Virus record (IMG/VR): IMGVR_UViG_3300049855_000348
Location: 156,490-220,489 of that record
DNA length: 64,000 nucleotides
Reading direction: 5' to 3' (one strand)
Under the pieces are notes generated by a model. That model was given only the letters and a program-made list of their open reading frames with translations. It was not told the origin of the DNA and ran no database searches. A program made the translations under genes and the position numbers. Positions 40,566 through 64,000 of the stretch are shown here, piece after piece. Every line of letters begins with the position of its first letter. Within the stretch, counting starts at the first letter, position 1.

Positions 40566-40892
40566 ATGCCGCTGAGCAAAGCTCAGATCCAGATTCTGAC
40601 CAACCCTGCTGTGCGTAAGCGGTTACCCGCCAGGGCGTCAGACTTCAAGTACGCCGACACCCTGCTCAGGGATGTGGGAGAGGGATGTCCTCGACTTCCA
40701 GCAGTCTGGACCAGGGTCTTCTCCAATCTCAGCCCAGCGGATGCTGCGTGGCTGAACCAGACCTTTCCCGGCCATCAATTCGCAGGTGTCGACCCCAAGG
40801 CACCACCACAGCCTTTGCCGCCGTTGGTGAAGCCGTCGAATATCGTTCACCGTGCGATTGAAGTCCTCCAGTCGTACAAGAAAGCCACATGA
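40566..40892 (+). CDS. Putative late protein
   Basis: MPLSKAQIQ...; TAACTA 5 nt upstream. Confidence 0.65.
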   Translation: MPLSKAQIQILTNPAVRKRLPARASDFKYADTLLRDVGEGCPRLPAVWTRVFSNLSPADAAWLNQTFPGHQFAGVDPKAPPQPLPPLVKPSNIVHRAIEVLQSYKKAT

Positions 40893-43800
40893 GCCTCGAT
40901 CGACCACTGTTCTCGACTAGCTCGGTGTATTCGTTGATCGAACTCAACGAAGTCATCACCCGCTACGCTCAAAACGATGAGCAGATGAAGGCTGTCGCCG
41001 AATCGCTCGAACAGATTCTCACCACCGTCTCGGCTGGTCAGATCCTGTCGCCGGCTGATCTCCAGGCTGCGGTCGATGCGATCTATGATGCCGGCAGTCC
41101 GCTGGCCCGTGCCTACATCGTCTCGCCCCCTTCTCGCTCACTGCAAGAGATTGCAAACCTGATGACGATCTCGCCACTGAGCGATCTCATCGAGGGAACC
41201 AAGCTCAACCCCACTGCCTGGATGCCCATCCTGCGCGTGTTCAGCATGCTCAAGGGCATGATCTACCTCGTCGAGAATGGCCCGAGCTACGACGCCGATC
41301 CGGTCTTCGTGAAAGATGGCTCGTTCTTCTTCACGTCGATCACTGATGGCAACAGCCCTGAGGGTCATCTCCTCTGTAGCGAAAATGGCACCGTGCTCGA
41401 AGTCGGTGGACCGATCTACCGTGTCCTGCCTGATGGCACTGATGCGATCACTCTGATCGAGTTTATGCTTCGCCGATTGGAGCAGCAACGCCTGCGCCAG
41501 ATCTATCGTTTGGGCTGCTTCGAGGCATCGGTCGATGCCAAGTACGACTCTGGCAGCAGCTACGATTTCATCGACAAGGTCTTCACCACCGGTGCGGGTC
41601 CTGAATTCAATCAGCGTTTCCCCTGTGGCTACACCGCAGCCGGTGAACTGCTGTTCCTGCGTTCGCAGGCTGGCAAGTACCGTGGTGCCGATCTCAACCT
41701 CTTCCGCCCTGGCTACAGTGCCCAGTCTGGCGTCGAAGATCGAGTCATCATCGGTGAGTCGACGGTGCAGACCCCGATGGGTCTCTTCCATATTCCGCAG
41801 TGCGTTGTGCGCTGGGATCACCTGCTGACCGATGAAGATCGTCAGCCGAATGCTGATGGCGATCCAGTCGTCTTCGTTGGCCTGCGCTTCAAGGTCAGCA
41901 TGCTGAAGCGTACCTCCTACGCCAATGGCGTAGCAGAGCCTGATGCCATCGTTGACGTTGGCACTGGTGATGGCGTCGTACTGATGAAGAGAAATGCCTT
42001 CGGCAGCGAGATCCCGAACTACCCAACGACGTTGACTGGTACCCAAGCTGAGAAGTTCCCAGCCGTCGCGGCTGAGGGTGTTGAACATGGTCGTGTGATC
42101 GGCTTCATCCAAAAGGATGGCCTGAACACCTTCGCTCAGTTCTTCCAGGTCTCACTCGACGTGGCGATCGTCAAACAGCACGGTCGTGCCTTCTTCGAGC
42201 AGGGTGTCGGCTACGCAGCCGGTCAGGTCGATGAGATCGGCAAGCTGGGTGAACTCGGTACCGACATCGACGTGGCCCCATGGCGTGCCTTCGGTACCGG
42301 TCCACGGCATGTGCTCGAAGTGGTGCAGACCGATGCCACGCTCGCCGGTGAAGGCTTCGTGCTTGATGTCGACCAGGGTGTCTTGAAGCGCGAGGAGAAG
42401 ACCTCCGACACTGCTGAATGGGAAGTCATCCTGCCCATCGGCCTGTCGCTGATGAAGAATCAGAAGCCCTTCAGCTTGGGTAACCTCAACGGCTGTTCGA
42501 CCCGCTTCACGGATGCCTGGGCAATCCGTCAGGTGACCAGCGTTCAGAAGTCCCTCAACACGGTCATCTTCGACGATGGCAATGGTGAGCCCGAAGCCTT
42601 CCCCCAGGACTTCATCGGTGCTGAGGTGACCTTCTGGCATGCCGACCGCACCAGCAGCGTGACCACCATCGTGGAGCGTGTTGGCGACCGTCTGGCTCGG
42701 ATCCCGACCGATGTGCTGGCCAAGGTCACCGCAGGTGATGTGGTCACCATCGACCGCCGTAAGCCGTCGAGCAGCTTCGATGGTGCCTACGAGCGTGAGG
42801 CCGGCATCACCAACTTCGTCGACCTGCGTCTGCTGGTACGCCGGATGGTCGATACCGAGGTCGTCCCAAGCTCGGAAGGGCTCCTCTCCCCCAGCCCGTC
42901 ACCAGCCCAGCCCTGGACCGCCCTGGTGCGTTCTAAGCCAGCTTCCCTGGTTCTGGCTGCCATGGCCCCATTCGCCGACAACGTGGCTGCAATCGGCAGC
43001 AAACTGCGTTGGCACTATGCCCAGCAGTTCATCGCCCTGGCCAGCCAGCGGCAGGACATGGTCGACATCACCGGCACCACAGCCGAGCTTCAGTCTTACC
43101 TGCTGCGGTGGGTTCAGAACTATGAGGCTAATAAGAACCACGAGTGGATCGTCGGCGAGGGCTCGATCATCCACTGGCCTGCCAAGAACCCGGTGACCAA
43201 GGTCAACCTGCGCCGATACAGCCCGCCCATCCTCCCTGGGGTGGACGACGGGATCACCATCGAAGAGGTCGCAGGCTGGGGTCCGGTGCCGGTGCTGACC
43301 AAGTACCTCCGCTCCGGTGACAACCAACGCTACCCGCTGCGCATCATCAAGCCGTTGGTCTTCGCCTCCGAGCGTTCCTTCTCGATCCCTGGCCACACCA
43401 AGCTCGCCGGCAGCTTCCGCTTCCAACCCGAGGACACCTGGATCGTTGACGAGGTGATAACCTTCGTCCTCTATCAGACCCAGAACCGCAATGGCCTGAT
43501 CCAGGAGGTGATCCTTGGTTCGTTCGACCTGCGTTGGCAGGAGGCATCCAACTTCTCAAACGCCACGGGCGTGTTCCGTATCGATGACGAGGCGAGCTAC
43601 GATCCGACGACTGGCTTCCTGAACATCAACTACAACCAGATCATCGACTTCACGGTTGAAGAGGCTGGTCGTCTGTCGGTCACTGCCGTCTATCATGACC
43701 TGACTGAGGTTCACCCGATCTACTCTTTCAACCTCGCCCAGTTCGGCCTGAACGTCAGCCATCTGGCCGATGCCAAGGTGTTCTCGATCGTGGACGGCAA

Positions 43801-44758
43801 GGTCGAAGAGAAGGCCGACGTGCTGCGCCTGGAAGGCATCTCGATTTCCAATGGTACGGTCTATATTCGCTTCAACCGTGATGACATCTTCAAAGCCATT
43901 GCTGTGCGTGGCATCTTCAAGACCAAGTGGGTGCTGCGCAACATCGCCTGGATCACCATCACCAACGTTTCGTACGACGAGAACAACATTCCGATCTCTG
44001 TGGAATACGATGCTCAGAACGTGCGTGATGCGATTACCATGTCGACACTGCTGGAAGCAGATAAACGCTGCCGTCAGGTCTACATCCCTTGTGCCACGAA
44101 GTATGGCTGGATCGATGTTGGCCAGACCAACATCCACACCGAGGCCATTCCTCAGAACGATAGTCCACGTTTCGGCTTCTTTGAACTCGACAACATCAAA
44201 GGCATCGACACGGCTCTGTTGATCGATGGTCCGGTCTACAATGCCTTCAAACCGGTCGACATCGACTATCGCTTCCTGGAGAAGTACGTCGACTCAACGG
44301 ATCTCGAAGAGATCAAATCAGTGGCCATCGTTCGTCACATCGTCACCGGCGCACGTCGCGTGTTCGTTGGTGTCTATCGTGAGGCCAACGGCGGCGGTGG
44401 AGTCACTGCTCTCAACAACGAGATCACGCTCGGCACATTGACTGATCAGGACGTTCTGTTCATCAACGATTCGCTGCTGGATTCGTCCTGGGTGCTGGAC
44501 TTCGCTGGTGTCATGACCACGGCACCTGATGGTGGCGTTGGTGACTTCGGTGACTCGAAGCTCATGCTGGCCGGTTACTGGTATGCCGGTCACTCGCTGG
44601 AGGACCGTGCTGGATCCTTCACACGCTTCCGCCCTGACACTGCTCAGTTCAACAGTCCGACCAAGAATGCCGACTTCTATCGTCTCGGCGATGTACCGAT
44701 GTCCTTCCTCTACCGTGGCAACACTCTGCTGTGGTCTGATCACACGAGACCGGCGTGA
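40889..44758 (+). CDS. Large putative virion structural protein (baseplate/tail-like)
   Basis: 1289 aa, acidic and beta-rich composition, in the late operon; no family recognised. Confidence 0.7.
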   Translation: MSLDRPLFSTSSVYSLIELNEVITRYAQNDEQMKAVAESLEQILTTVSAGQILSPADLQAAVDAIYDAGSPLARAYIVSPPSRSLQEIANLMTISPLSDLIEGTKLNPTAWMPILRVFSMLKGMIYLVENGPSYDADPVFVKDGSFFFTSITDGNSPEGHLLCSENGTVLEVGGPIYRVLPDGTDAITLIEFMLRRLEQQRLRQIYRLGCFEASVDAKYDSGSSYDFIDKVFTTGAGPEFNQRFPCGYTAAGELLFLRSQAGKYRGADLNLFRPGYSAQSGVEDRVIIGESTVQTPMGLFHIPQCVVRWDHLLTDEDRQPNADGDPVVFVGLRFKVSMLKRTSYANGVAEPDAIVDVGTGDGVVLMKRNAFGSEIPNYPTTLTGTQAEKFPAVAAEGVEHGRVIGFIQKDGLNTFAQFFQVSLDVAIVKQHGRAFFEQGVGYAAGQVDEIGKLGELGTDIDVAPWRAFGTGPRHVLEVVQTDATLAGEGFVLDVDQGVLKREEKTSDTAEWEVILPIGLSLMKNQKPFSLGNLNGCSTRFTDAWAIRQVTSVQKSLNTVIFDDGNGEPEAFPQDFIGAEVTFWHADRTSSVTTIVERVGDRLARIPTDVLAKVTAGDVVTIDRRKPSSSFDGAYEREAGITNFVDLRLLVRRMVDTEVVPSSEGLLSPSPSPAQPWTALVRSKPASLVLAAMAPFADNVAAIGSKLRWHYAQQFIALASQRQDMVDITGTTAELQSYLLRWVQNYEANKNHEWIVGEGSIIHWPAKNPVTKVNLRRYSPPILPGVDDGITIEEVAGWGPVPVLTKYLRSGDNQRYPLRIIKPLVFASERSFSIPGHTKLAGSFRFQPEDTWIVDEVITFVLYQTQNRNGLIQEVILGSFDLRWQEASNFSNATGVFRIDDEASYDPTTGFLNINYNQIIDFTVEEAGRLSVTAVYHDLTEVHPIYSFNLAQFGLNVSHLADAKVFSIVDGKVEEKADVLRLEGISISNGTVYIRFNRDDIFKAIAVRGIFKTKWVLRNIAWITITNVSYDENNIPISVEYDAQNVRDAITMSTLLEADKRCRQVYIPCATKYGWIDVGQTNIHTEAIPQNDSPRFGFFELDNIKGIDTALLIDGPVYNAFKPVDIDYRFLEKYVDSTDLEEIKSVAIVRHIVTGARRVFVGVYREANGGGGVTALNNEITLGTLTDQDVLFINDSLLDSSWVLDFAGVMTTAPDGGVGDFGDSKLMLAGYWYAGHSLEDRAGSFTRFRPDTAQFNSPTKNADFYRLGDVPMSFLYRGNTLLWSDHTRPA

Positions 44759-44883
44759 CCAGACCGTTTCCTTATATTGAATTGCAATGCAATTTCGCAG
44801 AGATTGTTATCTGTGCTGAGTCTTCATCGTCTTCTAATGCATCAAGTTCATCAAGTTCTTCTTCATCATCGAGTAATCCATAA
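44755..44883 (+). CDS. 42-aa Cys-motif + poly-Ser peptide
   Basis: GTG overlaps the upstream TGA; MTRPFPYIELQCNFAEIVICAESSSSSNASSSSSSSSSSSNP; similar to the 63759 ORF. Confidence 0.6.
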   Translation: MTRPFPYIELQCNFAEIVICAESSSSSNASSSSSSSSSSSNP

Positions 44884-44895: not shown

Positions 44896-47229
44896 TTATG
44901 ATAACATCTTGGCTAGCTGTTCATCCGACGGCATCTTGTTGACGTTGAGTGGTGTCACTCGTGGTCCAACTGAGATATGTTGGTCACCGATGCGAACCTT
45001 GCGACCGTTGCCGATGTAGGCGGTAGCTGAACCAGTGCTGTGATCGGTTGCCCAAGACAGCGTCCGCTTCACAGCCTTCTCTACAGCACGGCGAGCCGCA
45101 GCCATCTTGGGGTTGCGAACCACTGCTGGCTTGCGGGCAGACTGGAAATGTACGTCCTTCGAGAGTTTCCCGACAGGGTTCTGTTTCGAGATGGATTGCG
45201 CTGGTGCTGAATTCTGTTGTGAAGTCGGAAGATCATAGTTCCGACCGATGATCATCTCGTCGACCTTGTCCCAATCTGGGTGAGGCGACTGACCGGTGAT
45301 GTTGTGAAATCTTACGAACTGTTCATCAGCGTCATCAGCGTCACTGCGCTTGGCGACATACTCAGTCTTCCACATCTCTTTCAGATGGCGATTGTAGTTG
45401 AGGATGTCGCATGCCTCGATCAGTCGCGGCAGGTCCTTGCTGATGTTGACATCGAAGTTGGCAAACGAACCTTCCATCATCACCACGTAACGCTTCTCAA
45501 ACAGTTCGGCCATGCCGTTGATCATGTCATCCAACTGGTGATCGTAGAAGCCTTCGGCACAGGTGCCGATCATGATCGCCTTGGCAGCTTCGTAGACTGG
45601 GCTGTCCTGGAGCTTCTTCAATTCTGTTGGCTTGATGGCAGCCGACTCCTCGCCGGCCTTCATCGAGTCACGAACCTTCAAAGCCTCGGTCACACCACGT
45701 TGAAAGTGGGGAATGCCATGACGACGTTTCACTTGGGCATAGAATTCGTTAGCAGCCATCCAAACAGAGACGTGTCCCCATTCGGTCTTTGGCTCGGTCC
45801 AATGCCAGTGGATCGTACCGAACAACTCCTTCAGGCCACGGCTGACATGAGGTGCGGTGTTGACCACATGATCGAGATCAATCTCAGAAGCCTGTCCGTA
45901 TGCCTTGAGACGACGATGAAGCTCGATCAGCACATCGCGCCACACAGCGGCACGTGGGTCGATTCCACGGATCGGCTTCCACTCGCTTCTTGGCTTCACA
46001 TCATGCGCCAGCTTGGCAATGTGACTGACACCATCGTCGAGTGTCTGATCACGTCCAATGCTGTAATCGATCACACCGCCTTCGGTGTAAGCAGACACCC
46101 CGGTCGTTGCTCTGATATGTTGGCCTTCCTGGCGATGTTTTGGCTTGCCAGGAACTTCTCCCTTGTCTGTGAACTTGATGCTGGTCGACACTGCCCGTCC
46201 ACGCTTGGTGATGGCCACGCGAGGCATGCTCAGGTTGACCTTGCCGGTGGTTGGAAGTGGATTGGTGAAGGCTTGAATGCCGCCGTGAACTGCACCCAAG
46301 CGAATGATCTGATCACGTGGATCGATGGCGTTGATGACACGACTGATGACCTTGCGTTCACTACGCTCTGGGTTCCAGACTGAAGGATTATATTCGCCCT
46401 TCTTCTGTTGAGCGGTTTGGAACACGTCGATGATGTCGAAAGCATCGGAACGCATGAAGAATGCTTGTTCTGGTTCACCGTGGTAGACCACGGCATCCTC
46501 GGGTCCCTTGGCAGTGTCGATCACGACACTGATTCCAGCCTTCAGGAAGCGAGCACGCTGATCATTGTGGTTGAGAACACGCTTGGCGAATAGCTTGTAA
46601 CCGTTGACCGTGTTGGCCAAATCAAAGCCTGATTGAGAGGCAAAGAAGAACGCCTTCGGCACCGTCACGGGATGTGGCGACACTTTGGAAGCAGTCATCT
46701 CCCAGATGTCTTGCCAGAATTTTTCGACCGGTACGTCATCTCCCTGCGGAAGGACCTCCATCACATTGAGGATCTTCAACGCAGCGTCTTTGGTAAGAGT
46801 CTGAAGATCGAGTACCTTAGCGTTCGGTCGTAGTTTGATGACGCGCAGGTACCGAGAGTTGCCGGCGTAAGGAATACCGGCCTGCTCACTGATCACGAAT
46901 TCGAGCGGGTAGGTGTAGATGGCAGCCGGGTCAGAGTGGTTGGGCTTGGTCCACAGTGTAGTGTCAGGATGAGGGGTACGGGCAGCTTTGAGTCCGAGCT
47001 TTTTACGGTTCGTTGTCCAGTACCGTTCCTCGTAACCCGGTTCTGGACTTCTACCATATTGCGAGCCTACCATTCGCTTGTCATCGGTCGACGAGGCGAA
47101 GTTGGTGAACTGCACGAACAGGTCTTTGCGATGTGCCTGCGGCGTGTACTTGGCGACGAACTCACGCCAGCCCTTGGTGGACACATCAGAGACCAGAACC
47201 TCAGTGACGAGTTGATTGTAGAGATCCAT
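44896..47229 (-). CDS. Putative virion-packaged protein with an ART-like domain (paralogue A)
   Basis: KPNHSDPAAIYTYP...YLRVIKL...VVID.AK....V.Y.GEPEQA; N-terminal LVTE. Confidence 0.7.
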   Translation of the reverse strand: MDLYNQLVTEVLVSDVSTKGWREFVAKYTPQAHRKDLFVQFTNFASSTDDKRMVGSQYGRSPEPGYEERYWTTNRKKLGLKAARTPHPDTTLWTKPNHSDPAAIYTYPLEFVISEQAGIPYAGNSRYLRVIKLRPNAKVLDLQTLTKDAALKILNVMEVLPQGDDVPVEKFWQDIWEMTASKVSPHPVTVPKAFFFASQSGFDLANTVNGYKLFAKRVLNHNDQRARFLKAGISVVIDTAKGPEDAVVYHGEPEQAFFMRSDAFDIIDVFQTAQQKKGEYNPSVWNPERSERKVISRVINAIDPRDQIIRLGAVHGGIQAFTNPLPTTGKVNLSMPRVAITKRGRAVSTSIKFTDKGEVPGKPKHRQEGQHIRATTGVSAYTEGGVIDYSIGRDQTLDDGVSHIAKLAHDVKPRSEWKPIRGIDPRAAVWRDVLIELHRRLKAYGQASEIDLDHVVNTAPHVSRGLKELFGTIHWHWTEPKTEWGHVSVWMAANEFYAQVKRRHGIPHFQRGVTEALKVRDSMKAGEESAAIKPTELKKLQDSPVYEAAKAIMIGTCAEGFYDHQLDDMINGMAELFEKRYVVMMEGSFANFDVNISKDLPRLIEACDILNYNRHLKEMWKTEYVAKRSDADDADEQFVRFHNITGQSPHPDWDKVDEMIIGRNYDLPTSQQNSAPAQSISKQNPVGKLSKDVHFQSARKPAVVRNPKMAAARRAVEKAVKRTLSWATDHSTGSATAYIGNGRKVRIGDQHISVGPRVTPLNVNKMPSDEQLAKMLS

Positions 47230-48107
47230 CAGAACTCGCCGAAGAGGTCATCGACTGACTCGGCCAGCGTCTCACGCTTGGCGACCGAACCAGCACTGCG
47301 GATGAGGTTGATGACCTTCTCGGCCCGGTCACCCACCTGCAAGCGCCACGCCGTGCGCTGGAGGCTGTTGGCTGCCCTGGGATAGTCGAAGCGTTCCAAG
47401 TGATCCCGGGCATCCAGGTTGGCGAAGCCGGTCGGCCCGAGGTTGTAGATCAGGTCGGTCACCGCCAACTGGACCTCCTTGGGTTGCTCCTCGAAGGTCT
47501 TCATGACCCGAGGACCAGCCTTCAGGGCATCGGCGACCTTGGCGGCGAACAGAGCCTCGATCTCTTGGTCGGTCAGACGGCGTTGGCCGGTTTTGACGGC
47601 GGTGTAGTTGATGCCCAGGTCGCGCAGGTACCGAGCCGCACCGGGCTGATCCAGGTTGAAACCGACACCAATGGTCCGCTTACCGACCGAGTCTCGGTAG
47701 ACCTTCGCCCGGCGACCCTCGTTGGGGTGGATGAACTCCTTGGCCTCTTCCAGGCTCAGGGATTCCCTTTGGAAGGCCGTATCTGGCCCGGGGGGTGTCT
47801 CGGTAGGGGGCGGCGGGTAAGATGGCTGTGTGGGCTTCTGGTGCGTCGCAGTGGCCGGTTCCTTGGCTTCCACCGGTGGCTGGTAGCTCTCCTTGTTGCC
47901 GAGAGCCTTGGCCGCCAGCAGGCCGAGGAGGACGCCAGTGCTCGCCATGGCGGCACGCTTGGTCCACGGAAGATCGGCCTCGGACACCATAGGAGCGAAT
48001 AGGCTATCGACTGATTGGCTGAGTCCAACCGATTCCTTGACGATTCGGCGGGGTGGCCGGCGCACCTCCGTTTGATGAATCCACAGCGGTTGTGCTTTCG
48101 CAGTCAT
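47229..48107 (-). CDS. GH24 (T4-lysozyme family) muramidase with N-terminal extension
   Basis: E-X8-D-X5-T triad EGRRAKVYRDSVGKRTIGVG; YNLG; W..QVGDRA; start at ATG 48107. Confidence 0.88.
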   Translation of the reverse strand: MTAKAQPLWIHQTEVRRPPRRIVKESVGLSQSVDSLFAPMVSEADLPWTKRAAMASTGVLLGLLAAKALGNKESYQPPVEAKEPATATHQKPTQPSYPPPPTETPPGPDTAFQRESLSLEEAKEFIHPNEGRRAKVYRDSVGKRTIGVGFNLDQPGAARYLRDLGINYTAVKTGQRRLTDQEIEALFAAKVADALKAGPRVMKTFEEQPKEVQLAVTDLIYNLGPTGFANLDARDHLERFDYPRAANSLQRTAWRLQVGDRAEKVINLIRSAGSVAKRETLAESVDDLFGEF

Positions 48108-48112
48108 GCATC

Positions 48113-48118
48113 TATCTA
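48113..48118. promoter_or_regulatory. Bidirectional putative late promoter hexamer TATCTA/TAGATA
   Basis: 4 nt from ATG 48123 (+) and 5 nt from ATG 48107 (-). Confidence 0.55.
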
Positions 48119-48122
48119 AGTC

Positions 48123-49820
48123 ATGCACCGCGTTGATCTGACCGACCTTGCCAGGATCTCTGAAGCTCACTACTCGGATGTCTTCGGTGCAGCGATGCGG
48201 CGGTTCCACGACAAGTACAAGGACGCCGGTCCCGAGTTCTTCGTGAATTTCAACCCGGTGGTCAGCGATCCCCGGGACAAGACCATCCTTGGCCAGCAGA
48301 GCGATATCCCGGCACCCAAGAGCGGGCCGGACGCTGGGCACCCCCTGTTCAAGAAACCCGACCACAGCGACCCGGTGGGCACCTACGTCTACCCTGCTGA
48401 GTACGTCGCCAACCACTGGCATGACCTCCAGTACGGGTCAGACATGGGCAACCTGCGGGTGCTCAAGGTCAACACCGATCCCGAACACACACTGATCCTC
48501 AGCGACATGACGCAGGATCAGTTCCTTGAGGCAATGAAACGCCTCAACCTGGAATTCCATGTCCGTGATCACGGCTGGATCTACACCCGGTCGAAGCGTG
48601 ATGCGATTGCGATCTATGAAGCGATCTTCGAGTGGGAGGCACCGTCGGCACCCCATCACCGGGTGAACTCCTACGGCAAGGTGCTCTTCAAGCTCATCCA
48701 GAACGACTACCGCTTCGAGCCCAACGTGCCCGAGGAGGATGAGGATGCCGATGAGGAGGAGGGCGAGAACTGGAATGCATTCATGGAAACTGGGTTGTCG
48801 AAAGACAGCAAATACTCCTCAGCCGGTGAGTTCAAATACGAAGGTCAATTGAAGGTCCAGCACGTCACTGAACTGACGCAGATCAAGCAGACTCGTCGTC
48901 TGTTGAAGGCCAAGTATGAAGTGGTCATCGACCGGGCCAAGACTCCGCTGGAGGCTACGATCTACCCGTCCGAGCCAGAGCAAGCCGTCTGCCTGACCAA
49001 GCGGTCCTACGAGGTGGTCGACACCTACAAGATTCAGAACGCTGCTCAGGGTGACCAGACCGTCAGACCAGAACGTCTCGACCGTGAGAAGCTGACCAAG
49101 AAGGCTGGGTGGTTGATCGCCAAGACCATGGGTGAGTCGATCACCGAGAACGTCAGCCATTTCTTCAACCGCGAAGGAGTCAACCAGCCCGGTCGAATCA
49201 GGAATCTCCACATCCTGCGGAACTGGATCTCCACCGAACGTGTTGAGCAGCACCCCATCTCGTCATGGGATCCCACTGGTCAGATGACGGCTATCGATGC
49301 CTGGGTAACCACCAAGGGCAACCTGATTGTGGTCGATACAGTTGTCGCCAGGGCCGAGACCGTCGCCGATCCACAGGCCAAAGCACGCACTCATCAGTCA
49401 GTCTCAAAGGCTCGCATCCGTCCCGGTGAGGATCAGCAGGCGATCACTGACAACCTCACCAGCTATGTCGACTCGGCGATGGACAAGTCTGAGCATCGCA
49501 AGTTCGGCGCTCACAACACCATCTCTTTTGCGATCGGTCTGGTCACCGCTGCGGCACAACCAACGTTCATCAGAACCAGGGCGAAAGAGAGCCTGTCAGA
49601 TCTGCCGGCGAAGGTTCAGGAGGCGTTGCACAAGAACAGCGCCACTGCACCCTTCAAGCGGATCACCAACGCTCTGTTGGAAGAGTTCGTGAAAGCAGCC
49701 AAGAAGAAGGTCGCTTTGGTCAAACCACACGCAGATTCAGCAGCGAGTACATCCGCTGGAAATCCTCCGACAGCCACACCAGCGGCACCGGGTGATACTT
49801 CGGCGCATCCAACACCATAA
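48123..49820 (+). CDS. Putative virion-packaged protein with an ART-like domain (paralogue B)
   Basis: KPDHSDPVGTYVYP...NLRVLKV...VVID.AK....I.Y.SEPEQA; N-terminal RISE. Confidence 0.7.
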   Translation: MHRVDLTDLARISEAHYSDVFGAAMRRFHDKYKDAGPEFFVNFNPVVSDPRDKTILGQQSDIPAPKSGPDAGHPLFKKPDHSDPVGTYVYPAEYVANHWHDLQYGSDMGNLRVLKVNTDPEHTLILSDMTQDQFLEAMKRLNLEFHVRDHGWIYTRSKRDAIAIYEAIFEWEAPSAPHHRVNSYGKVLFKLIQNDYRFEPNVPEEDEDADEEEGENWNAFMETGLSKDSKYSSAGEFKYEGQLKVQHVTELTQIKQTRRLLKAKYEVVIDRAKTPLEATIYPSEPEQAVCLTKRSYEVVDTYKIQNAAQGDQTVRPERLDREKLTKKAGWLIAKTMGESITENVSHFFNREGVNQPGRIRNLHILRNWISTERVEQHPISSWDPTGQMTAIDAWVTTKGNLIVVDTVVARAETVADPQAKARTHQSVSKARIRPGEDQQAITDNLTSYVDSAMDKSEHRKFGAHNTISFAIGLVTAAAQPTFIRTRAKESLSDLPAKVQEALHKNSATAPFKRITNALLEEFVKAAKKKVALVKPHADSAASTSAGNPPTATPAAPGDTSAHPTP

Positions 49821-52171
49821 AGCCGAGAGCATCGTTCCAACAGCCGGCGTAGAGGCACCAACGCTTGGCGCACTGGCTTTCAACGAGCCACCAGATGGCT
49901 GACATGCAGTTGTGACGAGCACAGGATGCAATGATCCGATCACGTGGATCCAATTCAGTGCTCAGACCGGTGAAGCCGTTCTGACCGGTGAGTAACTTTA
50001 CACCACCATCGACCATCAGGTGGTAGAAGATGTCGGCGATCTCTGCGCCTTCTGGTCCGTTCTCTTCGCAGTAGCCACGACGAGTCAGATACTCTTCGAT
50101 ATCTGGCTCTCGTTGCGCTTCTGTAAATCCAGGAAGATAGGCACCAAGGACGACGAGACTCATAGCGTCTAATTACGGTGCTGATGCTCGGCGAATAGTC
50201 GCAATTTTTCTTCCGCTTCTCGTTGCATTTTGACTGGGTACCACTTCAGACACTCCGAGCCGAATGACTCTGGCGGAGCCTCCCTGTTCAACCAGTCTTT
50301 GATGTCTTGGTAGTTGCGTGTGGTGTAGTGTGGATTGTTCAACACCTTCTCGTAATCGTTCTCGAAGCATGCCTGAAGAAAGAGATCCTGAGGGATCTGT
50401 CCGAACGCAATCCAGGCAGCGATCCAGTAGTGAAATTCTGGGAGGACCGGAGTCTTCTTCAGAGAATGGATGACGTGGTGGTATTTCACCGTTGGTGTAC
50501 CTTGACCAGATCATCGCGGAGCTTGAACAGTTCACGACGAACTTTGATGCTGGTCCAGAGCACCCACGCTTGAAGCGAGAGAAGGATGCTGGTGATCACC
50601 CATGTGATGGTTGCAAGCACTGGGTGATCATTGGTGAAGAAGGTGAGGCCACCGAGTGCCAACAGAACGGTGGGTGGGAGAGCCTTGATCGTTTCTTTGG
50701 TCACCTGCCAGAACGTTGGGCGCTTAGCTTCACGGATTTCTTTGAGAGCATCTTTGATCAGATTGGCGGCGTTGGTTGCCATGGCTTCTCTCAGTGGACG
50801 ATGGGGGTGACGACGCCAGCCTTCTTGGCTGCGGCCTTCTCTTCACGGGTCATGCGGCGGTAGGAGCCACAACCCGTGCGGACCAGGGTGGGCTTGTTGG
50901 GCAGCCACTTACGGATCTGGCTCTCGTAGTAGGTTTTCGGTGCATTGTGATTCCACGATGCGACACAGGTTCGCTTCTCCTTGTCAATCGTGTGAACCTT
51001 GATCGACCAGATGCCGAGCGTGCTGAGCTTAGTATTGCCCATCTTATACGAATGGCAGTCGTAGACGACGGAATTCTCTTTCAGGCTCTCGAACTTCATA
51101 GAGTCCTCAGTTTTCAGATGGGCTTGTTTGAGATTTCTTTCCTGGTTTCCCATTCTTGATATCTGGATTACAGGTGCAGATACCATTTGGTTTCAAACCT
51201 GGACAGTTGTCATCATGATAAACTGTGACGTGTGTAACAGATCCAGGTTTCAGTAAACCAGCCTTTATGATTTTTTCGATATAGGATTCTTTTGGTTTTT
51301 TACTCACAGTACCTCCAGCAGCGGGATATGGTTTTCGAGGGAGACACGGACCTTCACTGGTCCTTTGGCTTCTTGGTAGAGCTTGAGGAATGTCGCGGCG
51401 AGTCGAGTGGTGACCATGACATGGACACCACCAGCATTGTCGGGCAGCCATTGGTCGACCACATACGCAGCAGCTTTCGCAGCGGCCTTGCCGATATTTG
51501 GCCCTGGGGTGAGAGTTATGGTGAAGGGGGTCACGCCTCGACCCGTTTTGCCTTGGCATTAGACACGCCGTAGTCAACGCATGCCTGTTTGGCCTCGATC
51601 AGAGTTTTTCTGGTCGAATAGCTGGATCCGTTGATGGAAATCACCCAACCTTCTTTTTGCTTCTTGATCAGATATCGGTTCGATCCGATATCTGCACAGT
51701 AGTAAGCACCGTTCACGGTATCCCAATGCGCAGTCCACAGGAACCGTACCGGTGGGTTGAGCAGCTTCTCAGCGTTCGAGATAGCCGTGTGGAAGCCAGG
51801 AAATGCTGCTCCGTTGATATAGGCACGGTGCGAGAAGTTGACGAGTTCTTGCAGGACCTCTCTGGTTTTCTTGTTCATTTGAAGACGATCTCCAGAATGG
51901 TCGGCTTGGGAGTGTAGAGCGGCATCCGAATGGAACCGGGAACCTTTGGTGGGCACCCACCATTGAGTCCTGAGAACTCGGTCGCACACCTCTGTGTTGC
52001 GAGTTTCGGCATCCACAAAGTGACGCTCAGAATCACCACCTTGTGAGGAAGGGGAAAAGAGATCTTCCCCTTCCTGATGGTGCATTCCTTCGTGTGAGAT
52101 TTCATCTCAGGCAGCGAAGCGAGACTCGTGGATCCCTTGGGCAGGTAGTCGACCCGGCAGTGAACCTTCAT
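49720..52171 (-). other. Cluster of small early hypothetical ORFs (49720-50163, 50169-50489, 50486-50782 membrane, 50791-51099, 51107-51307 HDDxC..CxC, 51304-51534, 51531-51878, 51875-52171)
   Basis: Coupled minus-strand ORFs downstream of the 52818 promoter. Confidence 0.6.
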
Positions 52172-52785
52172 GCGTACCACGAGCAGTAGGTCTCGCGGCC
52201 ATCCCACAGGTGGGCGCTCTTGCCGTAGGTGTACTTGGCCGAGTTGCCGATGTGGAAGCTGTCCTGGCTGACCAAGGTGACTTCGATCACCTCGCCTCCG
52301 GTCGATTCGAGATCGGCGGTGACGTAGGCCGACATGCCCGAGCAGCCCTTGGTGATCTTGTAGCCGATGGGCTGGACCAAGAGCTTGGTGCGGCTCTTAC
52401 GACCGACGACCCTGAAGAAGTCGACGTTCGTCTGTTCCCAGCCCCACGAGTGGACGAAGATCGTGCCGTCGGCGTGCTTGCTGCTGTCGATCGCGGCCTT
52501 GGAGGCTTTCTTCTCAGCCTTGTAGGCGGCGACGCGGTTGGCGATGGCGTCGGCATCTTCGAGGAACTTGGTCACGAAGGCATCGCGCTGTTCGACCGTG
52601 CGGAAGTTGTGGAAGAAGTCGGCCTTGTTGCGCTTGCCAAGAAAACCCTTGGCCAGGATGACCTGCTTCCCGCCCCGATCTTCGATCCAGGCGTAGGCCA
52701 CGCCGTGACCCGTCTTCGAGTCGAGCTTGGTGGCGTTCTTGTCAGCCGAGGGGAGGAAGTATTCGCGGGTGAGGGTGATGGCCAT
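52168..52785 (-). CDS. Conserved phage early protein
   Basis: SWGWEQTNVDFFRVV motif; AAGGA RBS. Confidence 0.8.
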   Translation of the reverse strand: MAITLTREYFLPSADKNATKLDSKTGHGVAYAWIEDRGGKQVILAKGFLGKRNKADFFHNFRTVEQRDAFVTKFLEDADAIANRVAAYKAEKKASKAAIDSSKHADGTIFVHSWGWEQTNVDFFRVVGRKSRTKLLVQPIGYKITKGCSGMSAYVTADLESTGGEVIEVTLVSQDSFHIGNSAKYTYGKSAHLWDGRETYCSWYA

Positions 52786-52817
52786 GGGTTTGTCCTTTGC
52801 TGTGCTTTGACCAACGA

Positions 52818-52845
52818 AGTATAGCGACCTTTTGGTCGCTGTCAA
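52818..52845 (-). promoter_or_regulatory. Early promoter with perfect operator
   Basis: TTGACA-GCGACCAAAAGGTCGC-TATACT. Confidence 0.88.
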
Positions 52846-52849
52846 CTAC

Positions 52850-54124
52850 CTACTTTTCGAGGTCTGCGAGCAGCTTCTGACCATAGGCATGATCATTCTC
52901 GGCTTCGCGGATTCGATCGGTCACCTGGAGGTAGGTGGTCGATCCCAGCCCTTCCAGGGGCAGAACCTTGAGATTCGTATCCACGGCATGCTTCAGGCGG
53001 TGGAGGGCGGCATTCCAGGCCAGCATGTCGTCACGGGCCGGTCCCGGGCTGTAGGTCGGCAGAACCTGATCAGAGCGGGCCATTTCGTAAGAGATGAGGA
53101 TTTGAATCTCATACCGTAGGCGATCCGCCAGGGCCGGGCTGAAGTGACTGGTATCGAAGGAGGTCAGGAGTGGGCGGGTCATTTGTATGCTCGCTTTGAC
53201 TAAGTGGTCAAAAGATGGTTGATGTTGAGCGGTCTGGTAGCCTTGAAGGCTAGCTCGCCCCACTTGCGGCCACGTCCATCGATCTTGGCGTGAAACTGAC
53301 CACGCTTCATGATGACTGAGTAGGAGGCGATCTCCTCGTTGTTCGGGTTGAACAGGGCGACCGAGAAGAGGGAGTGGTCGACGTAGTATTCCTGTGCCAC
53401 AGGGGAGATCGGCAGGCCGATCTGCTGCACGATGTCGATCAGTTGGTTAGTGCTCCCACAGTCAAACCCCTGTTCGGGGTACTGCGGAACGTCATAGACC
53501 GGGGGAACCGGCAGACCGTCGTCGAGAACTTGGATGCTCATCAGACCCTCAGTTCTGGTAGTTGGCTTCAGCCTGGGCACGCAGGGCAGTGATTTCGTCG
53601 AGCGAGAGGCGACCGGCGAGGTAGAGCAGGTGGAGGACTTCGGAGGAGGAGTTGCCGCCACCGATCTCTTTGGTCTGGAGGAAGGTCGAGCGGAAGTCGC
53701 GCACCGGCTGGCTCAGAGCTTCGAGCAAGAGCTTCTGGAGTTCGAGCTTGGCCTTGGCGAACTTGCGTTCCCGGGTCGTTTCAGCGTTGTCGACCTCGTA
53801 CTGGGCATCCGGGGTGACCGTGGCCACATCGCCTTCCAGAACCTCGCGGGAGAGCGGGAAAGCCTCTCCGGTGGAGAAGGATGGGTTGGCATCGCTACCG
53901 CTGCCATCCAGGCGCAGTTCGGTGCGGAAGAGGGTGCCGGGCTTGACGTGCTCGGACTGGAAGTCGCGGGTGAGGTCGGTTTTGCCGAGGATGAAACGGG
54001 TACCAGCCTTGAGCACCGGGCGATTGAGCCAGCCTTCGCGCATGCGCTTATCGACCACCTCAGCGAAGGGGTTGGCGATGTCCTTGGTGAGGACGTGGGC
54101 GGTTTCGGTGTAGTGGTAGGTCAT
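52850..54124 (-). other. Three hypothetical ORFs (52850-53182, 53200-53541, 53549-54124)
   Basis: Operon under the 54149 promoter. Confidence 0.65.
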
Positions 54125-54148
54125 TCGTATCCTCGCTTCGATGAGCAG

Positions 54149-54176
54149 AGTATAGCGACCTTTTTGTCTAAGTCAA
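54149..54176 (-). promoter_or_regulatory. Early promoter with operator
   Basis: TTGACT-TAGACAAAAAGGTCGC-TATACT. Confidence 0.85.
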
Positions 54177-54428
54177 CACCTTCTCTATGTGGCCTGGGGT
54201 GTACCGCTTCCCACCCGGTGATGGCAGATCACGACCTGCGATCCAACGGGCACCGACCAACGCAGCGTTGAATCGGAGCCACGTCTTGATCTCCTGGTTG
54301 GTGAGGTTCATCTCCTCGAAGGCAGGTTCGGTCCCGAAGACCTTGTTGTGTGCCTGCAACAGTTCAGCGACGATCGACAGGAACTGTTGCTTCCGGGCGA
54401 TCTTTTCGGCTGTCAGTGGGGTGGGCAT
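54168..54428 (-). CDS. Hypothetical protein
   Basis: MPTPLTAEK...; stop codon lies within the next promoter. Confidence 0.6.
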   Translation of the reverse strand: MPTPLTAEKIARKQQFLSIVAELLQAHNKVFGTEPAFEEMNLTNQEIKTWLRFNAALVGARWIAGRDLPSPGGKRYTPGHIEKVLT

Positions 54429-54567
54429 CGTTTGATTTTCCGTGAATTGCGGCGGTGCAGGTGGTGAGGAAGTAGACAACAAGGATAATGGTCGCGCATT
54501 GTGCGACCTCCGAGACGGCGGTTGGCCAGTTCTTCGGGTTTTGACCGGATCCTCTTCGGTGGTGGAA

Positions 54568-55380
54568 TCAGGCATCATCTTTCTCCTGGGCTCGGACGAA
54601 CTTGAAGATCTTGGTGGCGATATTGGTGCCGGATTCTTTGAAGGTCTCCTCGGGCAGATCGAAGTCTCCAAAGGTCTCACAGAAATCACTGTGACAGATC
54701 TCCAGCAGGCGCTTGTAGGGATTGACATCCTTGTGCAGGAAGTTGGCCGGCACGATGGCTACCAGGACGCCACCCGGCCTGAGAAAGTCCAGCGCATGCA
54801 GGATGTGTTCGGCATCCTGACCGTTGGAGAACGGTGGGTTCATGACGATGCGGTCACAGGAACGACCGATGGTCGGCTCGAACTGGAGGAAGTCGCCATG
54901 GCGGGCCATCGGGTACTTCTTGCGGAGGATGGCGACGGCCTCGGGGTTGAATTCGATCATGTCGACTGTGTTTGCGGAATCGGTTCCGATTGCACGAAAG
55001 ATTGCATCGACCAGGGCACCTTCACCTGCTTCCGGTTCCATGATTCTCTGGCCAACCTTCAGATCGGCATGACGTACCAGGATGTCAGCCGCGAAGTCGG
55101 GCGTGTAGAACGACTGGAAGAGGTTCTTCTTGTTCACCACCTCACCGGTGCCCAAGGCTTCGTCCAGCACTTCGGTGATGGGTTTGTCGAAGACCGTGGC
55201 CTGCGCCGAACGGTTCCACTTCCCTCCCAGGAGTTCCAGGATCTTCGCGCATGCCTTGTAGACCTTGGGATCCAGCTTCTGCTCGATCTTGAGATGGTTA
55301 CGGTTCGGGCCGGTGATCACCGCATTGCGGAGGATCTTGGCGATGTCGGGATCGATTTTGACTTTGGTGCTGGCAGCCAT
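54568..55380 (-). CDS. N6-adenine (amino) DNA methyltransferase, orphan
   Basis: FYTP, motif I MEPEAGEGA, GDFL, motif IV MNPPF, LRPGGVLVAI, FKESGT. Confidence 0.88.
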   Translation of the reverse strand: MAASTKVKIDPDIAKILRNAVITGPNRNHLKIEQKLDPKVYKACAKILELLGGKWNRSAQATVFDKPITEVLDEALGTGEVVNKKNLFQSFYTPDFAADILVRHADLKVGQRIMEPEAGEGALVDAIFRAIGTDSANTVDMIEFNPEAVAILRKKYPMARHGDFLQFEPTIGRSCDRIVMNPPFSNGQDAEHILHALDFLRPGGVLVAIVPANFLHKDVNPYKRLLEICHSDFCETFGDFDLPEETFKESGTNIATKIFKFVRAQEKDDA

Positions 55381-55414
55381 GAGGTTCTCTGGGTTGGGTT
55401 GATTGATGAAGGAC

Positions 55415-56441
55415 TTATTTTCTCATGTGCGCCGACAGACCCCACCAGCAGAGCGCATCGCGGATGCGGAGGGCGTTCTCGATGTGGTGACGGCGGTTCT
55501 CGTTTTTCATCCTGGCCATCGCACGATGGACGATCAGAAAACGTGCCATGCCGAAGGCGTGGTCGAGGCCGACTGTGTAGCACTTGATCTTGATGTCGCA
55601 GTGATTGGTCGCACAGACGATCTTGCGACCGTGGTATGGCTCGAACCCAGCCGACCGATGCCGCTCGTCGATGCCTGCGGTGTAGATCTCACGCAGACGA
55701 TCTCCGGCAGCATGCTGGAGCGTGAAGCCAGCATCGGCTTCTAGGTGTGGGAAGAGGGTGGCGGTGGCGTTCATGCCGACCTCATGGGCCAGGGTTGGGG
55801 ATTCTCCGCCTTGGGCGGGAGCTTGCCGGCTGCGACGCAGTCGGGGCACACGTCGTACTCGGTGCGGTAGCGGGCGAACTTGTTGCGCTTGCCACGGATG
55901 GGAGCGGTCTCAACCGGTCCACAGGCGGCAAGGTAGCCCCGGGAGTCGTAGGAACCGCTTGGCCACTTGGTGACCACGACTTTGTTGGTGCAGCCTTCGC
56001 AATCGCATTTGCGATGTAGGATGCCGGTGTCTCGGTTCTCGATGATCATCATCCTTCTCCGACTTGAACGAGTTTGCGACGGTAGGTGGGCTTGCGCTTC
56101 TTCTTGGGCGGCGAGTAGCGGTAAGCGCGGCGTTCGTCGCCAAGACTGATCTGAGTGAGGTCGTAGGCGTCGGCGATGACCTGACGTTCAACGAGGTGGT
56201 GTTCCAGGCGGACGCTGCGACCGTTCTTGTGGGCAGGAACTTCCAGCGTTGGCCGGTAGTTGCCAGCGGCGTTCAGGACATCGGTCAGATCTGAGAAACC
56301 GGTATGAAATCCGACCAGACGATCGAGGACTTTCAGGGCGGCGAGGGCAGCAGCGAGGCGCTTGCGACCACCCGGGAACTTGGTGACCTTGTCACCCTCG
56401 ATGATCTGCACTTCGTTGACGGTCGTGTCGTTGTTGCTCAT
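55415..56441 (-). other. Three hypothetical ORFs (55415-55774, 55771-56052 Cys-rich, 56049-56441)
   Basis: ATGA-coupled; the first is leaderless from the 56448 promoter. Confidence 0.65.
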
Positions 56442-56447
56442 GCCGGG

Positions 56448-56475
56448 AGTATAGCGACCAATTTATCTAAGTCAA
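56448..56475 (-). promoter_or_regulatory. Early promoter with operator
   Basis: TTGACT-TAGATAAATTGGTCGC-TATACT-6 nt-ATG. Confidence 0.85.
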
Positions 56476-56478
56476 CAC

Positions 56479-58000: not shown

Positions 58001-58007
58001 GGGCTCC

Positions 58008-58035: not shown

Positions 58036-58038
58036 TCG

Positions 58039-63279: not shown

Positions 63280-63687
63280 TCAGTAGAACAGGACGCGCAT
63301 CGAGCCATCAGGTTCCAGTACGGTGGAGATGCCTCGGAATACGAACATTTCACGCTGGGTCAGGGCGACCAATTCAGCCCATGCCTCGTTGGTGTTTGGG
63401 ATGTTCATCACCTTGCCAGCGACCGACTTGGGTGTGGTCACCGAGACCTTCTCACCCATCAGAAAACCAGCGATCTCGTTGATGCCCTTGCTGTCCTTCA
63501 GCAGGGCGTTCTGGATCTCCATGGCGCACTTGCAGTTGGGGTTGTCCTGGTAGCTGTTGATGTTCGCTTCCTGATTGGGGAAGCGTTCGAGGAACCTCCG
63601 GCGACGGGCGACCTCTTCAGGTGTTGGTGCGGCAGCATTCTGATACCGCAGAGCCTGGGTCAGTTGTTGAACGGTAAGTGCTAGCAT
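63280..63687 (-). CDS. Hypothetical protein
   Basis: 135-aa ORF; NPNCKC. Confidence 0.7.
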   Translation of the reverse strand: MLALTVQQLTQALRYQNAAAPTPEEVARRRRFLERFPNQEANINSYQDNPNCKCAMEIQNALLKDSKGINEIAGFLMGEKVSVTTPKSVAGKVMNIPNTNEAWAELVALTQREMFVFRGISTVLEPDGSMRVLFY

Positions 63688-63758
63688 GGTGACCTATAGA
63701 TGGAGCGAAACGTCTTCAGAGACGGTCGAAATCTAACTTCTAGACGCTACATAACCAA

Positions 63759-64000
63759 GTGAGACCAGATCCTTTCATCGATATCGTATGTGGATTTTCT
63801 AAAATCCAGTTGTGTCTCGGTTCTTCGGGTCCGTCATCATCCAGTCTTTTTTCTTCAAGCTCTTCTTCGTCCTCAAGCTCAAGCTCGTCAAGCTCAAGCT
63901 CGTCAAGCTCAAGCTCGTCAAGCTCAAGCTCGTCAAGCTCAAGCTCGTCAAGCTCAAGCTCGTCAAGCTCAAGCTCGTCAAGCTCAAGCTCGTCAAGCTC
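63759..64000 (+). CDS. Cys-motif + poly-Ser protein (5' part; runs off the window)
   Basis: TACATA-5 nt-GTG; MRPDPFIDIVCGFSKIQLCLGSSGPSSSSLFSSSSS... Confidence 0.65.
   Translation, partial: MRPDPFIDIVCGFSKIQLCLGSSGPSSSSLFSSSSSSSSSSSSSSSSSSSSSSSSSSSSSSSSSSSSSSSSSSSSSSSSS
63872..64000 (+). repeat. 15-bp tandem repeat (TCAAGCTCAAGCTCG)n, more than 8 units, encoding poly-Ser
   Basis: Read directly from the sequence. Confidence 0.95.

What the first reader, a model, noticed from the sequence alone, without database searches (positions are those of the whole stretch)
44755..44883. Unannotated two-Cys motif + poly-Ser family (stub copy)
Seen: the 42-aa ORF coupled to the 1289-aa structural gene reads RPFPYIELQCNFAEIVIC followed by poly-Ser and a stop. 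The ORF at 63759 reads RPDPFIDIVCGFSKIQLC followed by poly-Ser. The shared pattern is RPxP[FY]I[DE][IL]xCxFxxIx[IL]C. Neither is in the ORF track, and this copy is AT-rich relative to its neighbours. Inference: a short virion-docking module plus flexible serine linker for displaying variable cargo domains, with this copy cargo-less or truncated.
Basis: partly seen in the sequence, partly recalled or inferred. Interest (0 to 1): 0.7.

Follow-up and report, generated by a model that had tools for sequence, protein, structure and literature searches.

The report
Phage anchor-peptide, polyserine, swappable-cargo proteins
The 42-codon ORF is a real but cargo-less member of an undescribed protein family in a clade of uncultured freshwater jumbo phages, built from a 20-residue two-cysteine N-terminal peptide, a polyserine spacer of very variable length and an interchangeable end domain, most likely a way to hang adhesion domains on a large phage protein.

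Summary
The shared pattern occurs twice in the window, against 0.00 expected. The codons of both copies are under purifying selection against orthologues in related phages.

The window is the last 64 kb of a circularly assembled 220-kb jumbo phage from freshwater sediment. Copy 2 is not cut off. It runs across the contig junction through a 15-nt tandem repeat into a He_PIG Ig-like domain.

In four related contigs with DNA, an ORF lies at the stop of the 1289-aa gene's homologue (GTGA overlap in three, ATG one base after the stop in one). It has the same plan: Met, 8-10 residues, C-x7-C, 2-5 residues, polyserine. In the three that are complete, unrelated cargo follows (about 100-140 aa or 1157 aa).

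Copy 2 has a 294-aa orthologue with the same anchor and an Ig domain. The window's copy 1 is therefore the cargo-less allele of a hypervariable slot. It also persists in a roughly 96-97%-identical strain.

No Pfam, PHROG or NCBIfam family covers the anchor. Gene callers miss these genes or call the opposite strand.

The modular "anchor, linker, cargo" reading is supported. Docking to a virion is plausible but untested, and the 1289-aa protein is not shown to be structural.

The parts
40889..44758 (+). 1289-aa beta-rich protein of unknown function. Its TGA stop overlaps the start of copy 1. It is the conserved left flank of 'slot A' and the candidate partner.
   Evidence: ORF. It has 16 homologues at 39-84% identity. 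There is no Pfam, PHROG, NCBIfam or PDB match. An AF2 model of the last 600 aa is mostly beta, pLDDT 70.9. One homologue (P0011) carries a PA14 domain.
44755..44883 (+). Copy 1, the cargo-less 'stub' of slot A (42 codons). GTG start 44755-44757 within a GTGA overlap; anchor peptide with C-x7-C at 44761-44814; Ser-rich tract 44821-44874; Asn-Pro; TAA 44881-44883.
   Evidence: Against the L008 orthologue the anchor codons give pS = 1.0 and pN = 0.12. The stub and its stop are kept in a roughly 96-97% identical strain, run X4. An identical 166-nt contig from RNA library X3 spans 44635-44800.
44896..47229 (-). Convergent 777-aa gene, the conserved right flank of slot A. Its stop lies 12 nt after the stub's stop.
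   Evidence: Homologues occupy the same position in L008, L010 and the P0007 contig.
63745..63766 (+). 22 nt around the GTG start of copy 2 that are identical in the L014 orthologue, although the region overall is 85% identical. A likely initiation or regulatory element without a Shine-Dalgarno match.
   Evidence: An in-frame TAG 15 nt upstream fixes the GTG as the start.
63759..64000 (+). 5' part of copy 2 (slot B). GTG start; anchor peptide with C-x7-C at 63762-63815; polyserine, including the 15-nt tandem repeat at 63873-64000. The gene continues over the circular junction into genome bases 1-435 (polySer plus He_PIG Ig-like domain).
   Evidence: The 294-aa orthologue in L014, contiguous in one contig, has the same anchor, a polyserine tract of about 170 residues and the same Ig domain.
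63280..63687 (-). 135-aa gene, divergent from copy 2, the conserved flank of slot B. In L011 its homologue directly follows the slot-A gene.

Best explanation
These ORFs belong to an undescribed family of modular phage proteins. Each has an N-terminal peptide of about 20 residues: Met, 8-10 residues with alternating hydrophobics, then C-x7-C. A polyserine spacer follows, ranging from 18 to about 170 or more residues and encoded partly by tandem repeats. An interchangeable C-terminal domain comes last.

The clade keeps two genomic slots.
- Slot A lies at the stop codon of a conserved 1289-aa beta-rich protein and is read as a separate polypeptide by termination-reinitiation (GTGA overlap, or ATG one base after TGA).
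- Slot B is a stand-alone gene next to a LamG/DUF2341 operon.

The most likely mechanism is partly inferred. The N-terminal peptide acts as a tether that fixes the protein to a large partner; for slot A this is most likely the co-translated 1289-aa protein, probably on the particle surface. The polyserine acts as a flexible spacer, possibly O-glycosylated. The end domain (Ig-like, or Cys-rich arrays) binds surfaces or glycans.

The two invariant cysteines either close a small loop or metal site that shapes the tether, or bond to the partner. The window's slot-A copy has lost its cargo by deletion. It either still occupies the docking site as a bare tag, or is on its way to decay.

Shown: reality, conservation, frame, modularity and truncation. 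Inferred: tethering, the partner, virion location and glycosylation.
For: - Chance is excluded: 2 matches against 0.00 expected.
- The frame is selected: window against L008 gives pS = 1.0 and pN = 0.12; copy 2 against L014 gives pS = 0.85 and pN = 0.14.
- Five N-terminal members at slot A (window, L008, L009, L010, L011) and two at slot B (window, L014) share one plan. C-x7-C begins at residue 10-12 and the first Ser run at residue 23-26.
- The start lies at the partner's stop in all five slot-A cases. AAGAGG or AAGAGA lies 5-11 nt upstream in three of them.
- Cargo differs in every complete slot-A member: none, about 140 aa, 1157 aa with 39 Cys, about 100 aa. BLASTP finds no cross-similarity.
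- Slot-B cargo is a He_PIG Ig-like domain.
- Anchor subtypes follow phage lineage, not slot. RPxP[FY]I.. occurs in window A, window B, L008 A and L014 B. [IL][DE]C[DN]E[GN]xI[FY]IC occurs in L009 A, L011 A and L017 B. This fits a shared, co-evolving docking site.
- Context points to surface or adhesin proteins: LamG/DUF2341 next to slot B, a PA14 domain in one homologue of the partner, a faint Fibritin_C match upstream in L017, and a GT2 glycosyltransferase beside the L008 member.
- The stub persists in a second strain.
Against: - No direct evidence of translation, binding or virion location exists.
- The 1289-aa protein sits among nucleotide-metabolism genes (dCTP deaminase, thymidylate synthase). 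It has no recognisable structural-protein fold, only generic beta-sandwich likeness.
- The only sheath-like ORF is about 100 kb away.
- Cys-rich cargo would suit an extracytoplasmic protein better than one assembled in the cytoplasm.
- In L017 the C-x7-C segment lies about 235 residues inside a 916-aa ORF. The module therefore need not be N-terminal.
- Lineage-wise similarity of the anchors could also come from gene conversion.
- The family was found only in this clade. Pattern scans of three large collections gave chance hits only.
Confidence: 0.5

Rival explanations
1. The family is real, but the window's 42-codon copy is only a dead remnant. A deletion removed the cargo, and in the L008-like state a glycosyltransferase too. 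What is left has no function.
For: Every other slot-A gene read to its end has cargo (L009 runs off its contig inside the polyserine). L008, whose partner protein is 84% identical, has about 1.5 kb more here. tblastn finds no trace of that cargo or of the GT2 in this genome. Synonymous sites are saturated, so the measured purifying selection may predate the deletion.
Against: The stub keeps its start overlap, both Cys, an unbroken Ser tract and its stop. A strain about 96-97% identical, from another study, has the same stub with one conservative change and a different Ser count. If the peptide completes or caps a site on the partner, a bare tag is still useful.
Confidence: 0.3
2. The proteins are not particle-bound. 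They are released or exported from the infected cell, or act on its envelope, and the N-terminal peptide is an unconventional export or membrane-association signal.
For: Polyserine linkers are otherwise typical of secreted multidomain carbohydrate-active enzymes of Cellvibrionaceae (PMC2699552). The cargo is Cys-rich or Ig-like. A lysozyme-domain gene lies nearby.
Against: The N-termini have 2-5 charged residues in the first 20 and no apolar run longer than 5, so they are neither Sec nor lipoprotein signals. Position -1 before the second Cys is always I or L, not G, A or S. Start-at-stop coupling to a 1289-aa protein and lineage-wise co-variation are better explained by a protein partner.
Confidence: 0.15
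3. Copy 1 is a C-terminal extension of the 1289-aa protein, added by programmed frameshifting, as is known for Ig-like domains on some phage structural proteins.
For: It starts within the last codons of the upstream gene, in another frame.
Against: There is no slippery heptamer in the 8-codon window between the two stops. The frame offset is -1 in four members but +1 in L011. Slot-B members share the same peptide and stand alone after an in-frame stop.
Confidence: 0.04
4. The coding strand is the opposite one (acidic D/E/L-rich ORFs), or the stub is a RiPP-like precursor peptide.
For: Gene callers called opposite-strand acidic ORFs over the polyserine DNA in L014, L017 and the P0007 contig. 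The stub is short, with a conserved leader-like N-terminus and Ser/Cys content.
Against: The opposite strand of the stub has no start codon giving 30 aa or more. The Ser frame joins a selected N-terminal peptide to a Pfam-recognised Ig domain. Other members carry large folded cargo. No modification-enzyme families appear among the neighbours scanned.
Confidence: 0.02

Closest known systems
Capsid decoration proteins with Ig-like domains: T5 pb10 and T4 Hoc (PMC5292684, PMC10385173)
   Same: These are small accessory phage proteins. A binding module at one end fixes solvent-exposed Ig-like domain(s) to a large phage assembly. Copy 2 ends in an Ig-like (He_PIG) domain.
   Different: pb10 and Hoc bind through folded alpha-helical domains of tens of residues. 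Here the candidate tether is about 20 residues with C-x7-C, followed by a very long polyserine spacer. There is no sequence similarity. The cargo is interchangeable and not always Ig-like. Virion location is unproven.
Polyserine linkers (PSLs) of secreted carbohydrate-active enzymes in Cellvibrio, Saccharophagus and Teredinibacter (PMC2699552, which cites Howard et al. 2004)
   Same: Spacers made almost wholly of Ser, tens of residues long, separate autonomous domains. L010 has eight domains separated this way.
   Different: Those are bacterial, carry Sec signal peptides and join catalytic and carbohydrate-binding modules. These are phage genes without a signal peptide or CAZy domains, and the tracts reach about 170 or more residues.
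Ig-like domains added to phage structural proteins (Fraser et al. 2006, J Mol Biol; recalled from my own knowledge, not read here)
   Same: An accessory adhesion-type domain is encoded at the 3' end of a large phage gene, in another frame.
   Different: Here it is a separate, re-initiated polypeptide rather than a frameshift fusion, and a stand-alone paralogue exists.
Cohesin-dockerin and peptide-tag style modular assembly (analogy only)
   Same: A short conserved tag shared by proteins with different cargo, which co-varies by lineage.
   Different: No receptor module has been identified, there is no sequence or fold relation, and binding is untested.

Membership tests
He_PIG putative Ig domain (PF05345), copy 2 cargo only | Match to the Pfam profile above the gathering score (24 bits) | tested here: met
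   35.3 bits, E = 1.6e-8, on genome bases 1-435. It is the only such match in the genome. The stub has no domain.
Hoc / pb10-type capsid decoration proteins | Sequence-recognisable capsid-binding domain | tested here: not met
   No Pfam or PHROG match for either copy or for relatives' full-length members.
Hoc / pb10-type capsid decoration proteins | Presence on the particle, bound to the major capsid protein | not testable with these tools
   This is an uncultured phage from a sediment metagenome. There are no proteomic data.
Polyserine-linker proteins (Cellvibrionaceae type) | Tract of about 80% or more Ser, tens of residues long, between domains | tested here: met
Polyserine-linker proteins (Cellvibrionaceae type) | Secretion signal and carbohydrate-active or binding modules | tested here: not met
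   No hydrophobic core in the N-termini. No CAZy or CBM Pfam hits in the cargo.
Bacterial lipoprotein (signal peptide II) | Positively charged n-region, uncharged hydrophobic h-region, and a lipobox [LVI][ASTVI][GAS]C | tested here: not met
   2-5 charged residues within the first 20. The longest apolar run is 5 or less. Position -1 is I or L in all seven members.
Programmed-frameshift C-terminal extension | Slippery site and a constant frame offset relative to the upstream gene | tested here: not met
   No slippery heptamer. The offset differs in L011. Slot B stands alone.
RiPP precursor peptide | Neighbouring modification enzyme (LanM/LanB, radical SAM, YcaO and the like) and a short core peptide | tested here: not met
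   None found among the neighbours scanned. Other members are 167-1157 aa with folded cargo.

The most novel reading that the evidence does not exclude
The 20-residue C-x7-C peptide is a transferable docking tag. A clade of jumbo phages uses it to load interchangeable adhesion domains, on polyserine tethers whose length can change through repeat gain or loss, onto one receptor site of a large particle protein. The cargo-less stub then acts as a cap or competitor that sets how many sites carry cargo. This would be a natural plug-and-display system on a virus, with anchor and receptor co-evolving by lineage.
Probability: 0.2. Interest if true: 0.8.

Novelty: new variant of a known kind. Interest (0 to 1): 0.6.

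Why it matters
If the tether reading is right, this is a compact natural system for hanging arbitrary domains on a phage. It uses a 20-residue tag and a spacer whose length varies. Cargo is exchanged at two fixed genomic slots that also coincide with rearrangement breakpoints. That bears on how uncultured jumbo phages diversify surface adhesion, and it could be borrowed for phage display.

There is also a practical annotation point. These genes are systematically mis-annotated. They are missed, started at an internal ATG, or called on the opposite strand as acidic repeat proteins. Their repeats break assemblies; here they created the contig ends and a spurious 'direct terminal repeat'.

Tried and rejected
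- **Pattern scans.** Back-translated anchor patterns were scanned in viral contigs (strict and relaxed), metagenome contigs and genome contigs. Only chance hits came back: stops inside the match, no polySer. The pattern derived from two copies was too narrow, and relatives were found through the neighbouring genes instead.
- **Nucleotide and protein searches.** megablast and tblastn of the locus against GenBank phages gave no match. The search for related loci with the 1289-aa protein in IMG/VR found none.
- **Cargo of copy 2.** A homologue search found only the protein itself.
- **Complex prediction.** The last 600 aa of the 1289-aa protein plus the 42-aa stub scored 0.02 against a mark of 0.32. 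This is no verdict and counts neither for nor against binding.
- **Fold searches.** The C-terminal model was searched against PDB, BFVD, VIA wide, the atlas and AFDB clusters. Only generic Ig-like or beta-sandwich likeness appeared, all below noise.
- **L008 cargo.** AF2 without an alignment gave pLDDT 42, which is unusable. The atlas lead to Phage_cement_2 scored 0.76, too weak, and Pfam did not confirm it.
- **Partner cysteines.** No Cys column in the 1289-aa protein is specific to lineages that have a slot-A gene.
- **RNA evidence.** None was listed for copy 2. The single RNA-library contig over the stub junction cannot exclude DNA carry-over.
- **Promoter and terminator scans** around both copies showed nothing above shuffles.

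Full report
**What is at the coordinates**

Window 44755-44883 (+) is a 42-codon ORF. Its GTG start overlaps the TGA of the 1289-aa ORF (40889-44758) as GTGA. It reads M/V-TRPFPYIELQCNFAEIVIC-AE, then 18 Ser-rich codons, then NP-stop. Window 63759 onward reads M/V-RPDPFIDIVCGFSKIQLC-LG, then polyserine to the end of the window.

The back-translated shared pattern occurs exactly twice in the window, against 0.00 expected from shuffles. A six-frame scan finds exactly two copies in the whole genome. Local GC falls to 0.36-0.43 at copy 1, against 0.56 for the genome.

**The genome and the true extent of copy 2**

The window is bases 156490-220489 of a single 220,489-bp virus record. IMG/VR classes the record as having 'direct terminal repeats', and CheckV estimates it at 100% complete. 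The source is a freshwater sediment metagenome.

The two contig ends overlap by 8 + 15n bases, up to 128, inside a perfect 15-nt tandem repeat that encodes SSSSS. Every register keeps the reading frame. Copy 2 is therefore a protein of 182-222 aa or more: anchor, then polyserine of about 73 residues or more, then a 90-residue domain. That domain matches Pfam He_PIG (PF05345, 35.3 bits, E = 1.6e-8) and is the only such domain in the genome.

A 112-kb contig from the source run passes through the junction, so the wrap-around is real. The 'terminal repeat' is the polyserine array. The opposite strand of the stub has no usable start codon.

**Relatives: slot A**

GenBank phages and IMG/VR gave nothing for the locus. 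A protein search with the last 490 residues of the 1289-aa protein found 16 homologues at 39-84% identity in metagenome assemblies. In the four relatives at 59% identity or more whose DNA could be fetched, an ORF lies at the homologue's stop codon.

| Locus | Identity of partner homologue | Start | N-terminus | Total length and cargo |
|---|---|---|---|---|
| L008 | 84% | GTGA overlap | MSRPIPYIELKCNFAEVIIC | 253 aa, about 140-aa domain |
| L009 | 66% | GTGA overlap | MSDLIYGVSIDCDENSIFIC | contig ends inside the polyserine |
| L010 | 64% | GTGA overlap | MSNLETLIRSLCNQGSLCLC | 1157 aa, eight domains separated by polyserine, 39 Cys |
| L011 | 59% | ATG one base after TGA | MDSLSYQLECNEGRIFIC | 167 aa, about 100-aa Cys-containing domain |

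In all of them C-x7-C begins at residue 10-12 and the first Ser run at residue 23-26. Only the two Cys are invariant. The cargo domains show no similarity to one another. More distant homologues (L012 at 47%, L013 at 39%) have no such ORF.

Two further contigs give only indirect signs. In one, a minus-strand ORF is called over the 3' end of the large gene. The other ends 104 nt after the large gene. AAGAGG or AAGAGA lies 5-11 nt before the GTG in three members.

**Relatives: slot B**

The 355-aa gene convergent on copy 2 has homologues at 82% and 87% identity. In L014, a 294-aa gene in the same position and orientation reads M/V-RPDPFIRIECGFSKLSLC-TGTE, followed by about 170 residues of Ser-rich spacer and the same Ig-like domain. 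It is contiguous in one contig. The 22 nt around its GTG are identical to the window, while the surrounding region is 85% identical. L015 ends in polyserine plus a more diverged domain of the same kind.

A distant relative, L017, whose neighbouring gene is 34% identical, has a 916-aa ORF on the other strand orientation. It starts 3 nt after the neighbour's stop. It contains ..FSLDCDEGPIYICE followed by a long (SSSE)n tract and a Cys-rich domain, but this segment lies about 235 residues from the ORF's first start codon.

**Is it coding, and in this frame?**

Over the anchor codons, window copy 1 against L008 gives pS = 1.0 and pN = 0.12. Copy 2 against L014 gives pS = 0.85 and pN = 0.14. This frame is therefore selected at the protein level, in both a coupled and a stand-alone context. 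That excludes an RNA or DNA element as the reason for conservation.

An RNA-library run from another sediment study holds an identical 166-nt contig across 44635-44800. This fits co-transcription with the large gene, but DNA carry-over cannot be excluded.

A strain about 96-97% identical, in a freshwater metagenome from another study, keeps the stub. Its contig covers 44824-44985 and retains the stop, with one A fewer in TAAA. Its unaligned end reads ..IIICAESS, which implies a different Ser count.

**What the stub is**

Every slot-A gene that could be read to its end carries cargo, and the closest relative (L008) has about 1.5 kb more DNA here: the cargo plus a GT2 glycosyltransferase (Pfam PF00535, E = 2.4e-23). 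No trace of either is left in this genome. The window's copy is therefore a derived, cargo-less allele. Whether it still works as a bare tag or is decaying cannot be decided. I put about 0.3 on pure decay.

**How it probably works**

The N-terminus is not a Sec or lipoprotein signal. It has 2-5 charged residues in the first 20, no apolar run longer than 5, and I or L at position -1 before the second Cys. It is not a frameshift extension either: there is no slippery site, the frame offset differs in L011, and slot B stands alone.

Three features argue for a short tether that fixes cargo to a partner:
- The start sits at the stop of one particular large protein in five lineages.
- A paralogue with the same peptide is encoded elsewhere in the genome.
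- Anchor subtypes follow phage lineage rather than slot. RPxP[FY]I.. occurs in window A and B, L008 A and L014 B. [IL][DE]C[DN]E[GN]xI[FY]IC occurs in L009 A, L011 A and L017 B.

The obvious candidate partner is the 1289-aa protein, with polyserine as the spacer and Ig-like or Cys-rich domains as binders.

The context leans toward surface or adhesin functions but does not prove a virion location. There is a LamG/DUF2341 protein beside slot B, a PA14 insert in one partner homologue, and a faint Fibritin_C match upstream in L017. Against this, the 1289-aa gene lies among nucleotide-metabolism genes. Its model shows only generic beta-sandwiches. One complex prediction gave no verdict and is not used as evidence.

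**Comparison with what is known**

In architecture, the closest known proteins are the decoration proteins T5 pb10 and T4 Hoc, which combine a binding module with exposed Ig-like domains (PMC5292684, PMC10385173). The closest known spacers are the polyserine linkers of secreted Cellvibrionaceae enzymes (PMC2699552).

Membership of either group fails on the defining parts that could be tested: there is no recognisable capsid-binding domain, no signal peptide and no CAZy modules. No Pfam, PHROG or NCBIfam model covers the anchor. Three literature searches found no description of polyserine proteins in phages. I rate it a new variant of a known kind, namely modular display or adhesin proteins of phages, built on an undescribed anchor module.

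**Verdict**

The feature is real and conserved, and it is systematically mis-annotated. The docking function is plausible at about 0.5 and is testable by a simple pull-down. Interest 0.6.

Noticed in passing
window 63873-64000 and genome bases 1-128: The contig ends lie inside the 15-nt Ser-coding tandem repeat and overlap by up to 128 nt. The record's 'direct terminal repeats' label is therefore most likely an assembly overlap within a gene, not a packaging feature. The true repeat number is unknown.
   Followed up: yes
window 44896-63687, compared with L011:8783-10941: In L011 the genes that directly follow the slot-A polyserine gene are homologues of the window's 135-, 286- and 207-aa genes, which flank slot B on the other strand. 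The roughly 19-kb segment between the two polyserine genes is therefore inverted between lineages. In L017 the slot-B gene alone has the opposite orientation. Rearrangement breakpoints coincide with polyserine genes.
   Followed up: partly
L008:8664-9545: A GT2-family glycosyltransferase (PF00535, E = 2.4e-23) lies directly after the polyserine gene in the closest relative and is absent from this genome. It is a possible modifier of the serine tract.
   Followed up: partly
window 52804-52846, 54133-54188, 56432-56487, 58012-58035, 59441-59496 (minus-strand sense) and 60949-61010 (plus-strand sense): A repeated intergenic element reads TTGAC(A/T), then a 17-nt spacer holding the palindrome GCGACC..GGTCGC, then TATA(C/A)T. 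It looks like a family of sigma-70-type promoters with an operator in the spacer.
   Followed up: no
L014:4103-4723, L017:6803-7585 and L017:6066-6554, the P0007 contig 7405-7881, and genome bases 178-435 (P0020): Automatic gene calls over polyserine genes are wrong in a consistent way. They give acidic D/E/L-repeat ORFs on the opposite strand, or truncated products from internal starts, such as the 82-aa He_PIG protein called in this genome.
   Followed up: yes
window 47229-48422 (-): A 397-aa protein with a C-terminal phage-lysozyme domain (PF00959, E = 9e-9) lies next to the 777-aa unknown gene, convergent on slot A. This gene pair is conserved in relatives.
   Followed up: partly
genome 30586-33846, outside the window, and window 20604-20883 and 51123-51336: There are further AT-rich islands (GC 0.32-0.36) in a 56% GC genome. 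They were not examined.
   Followed up: no
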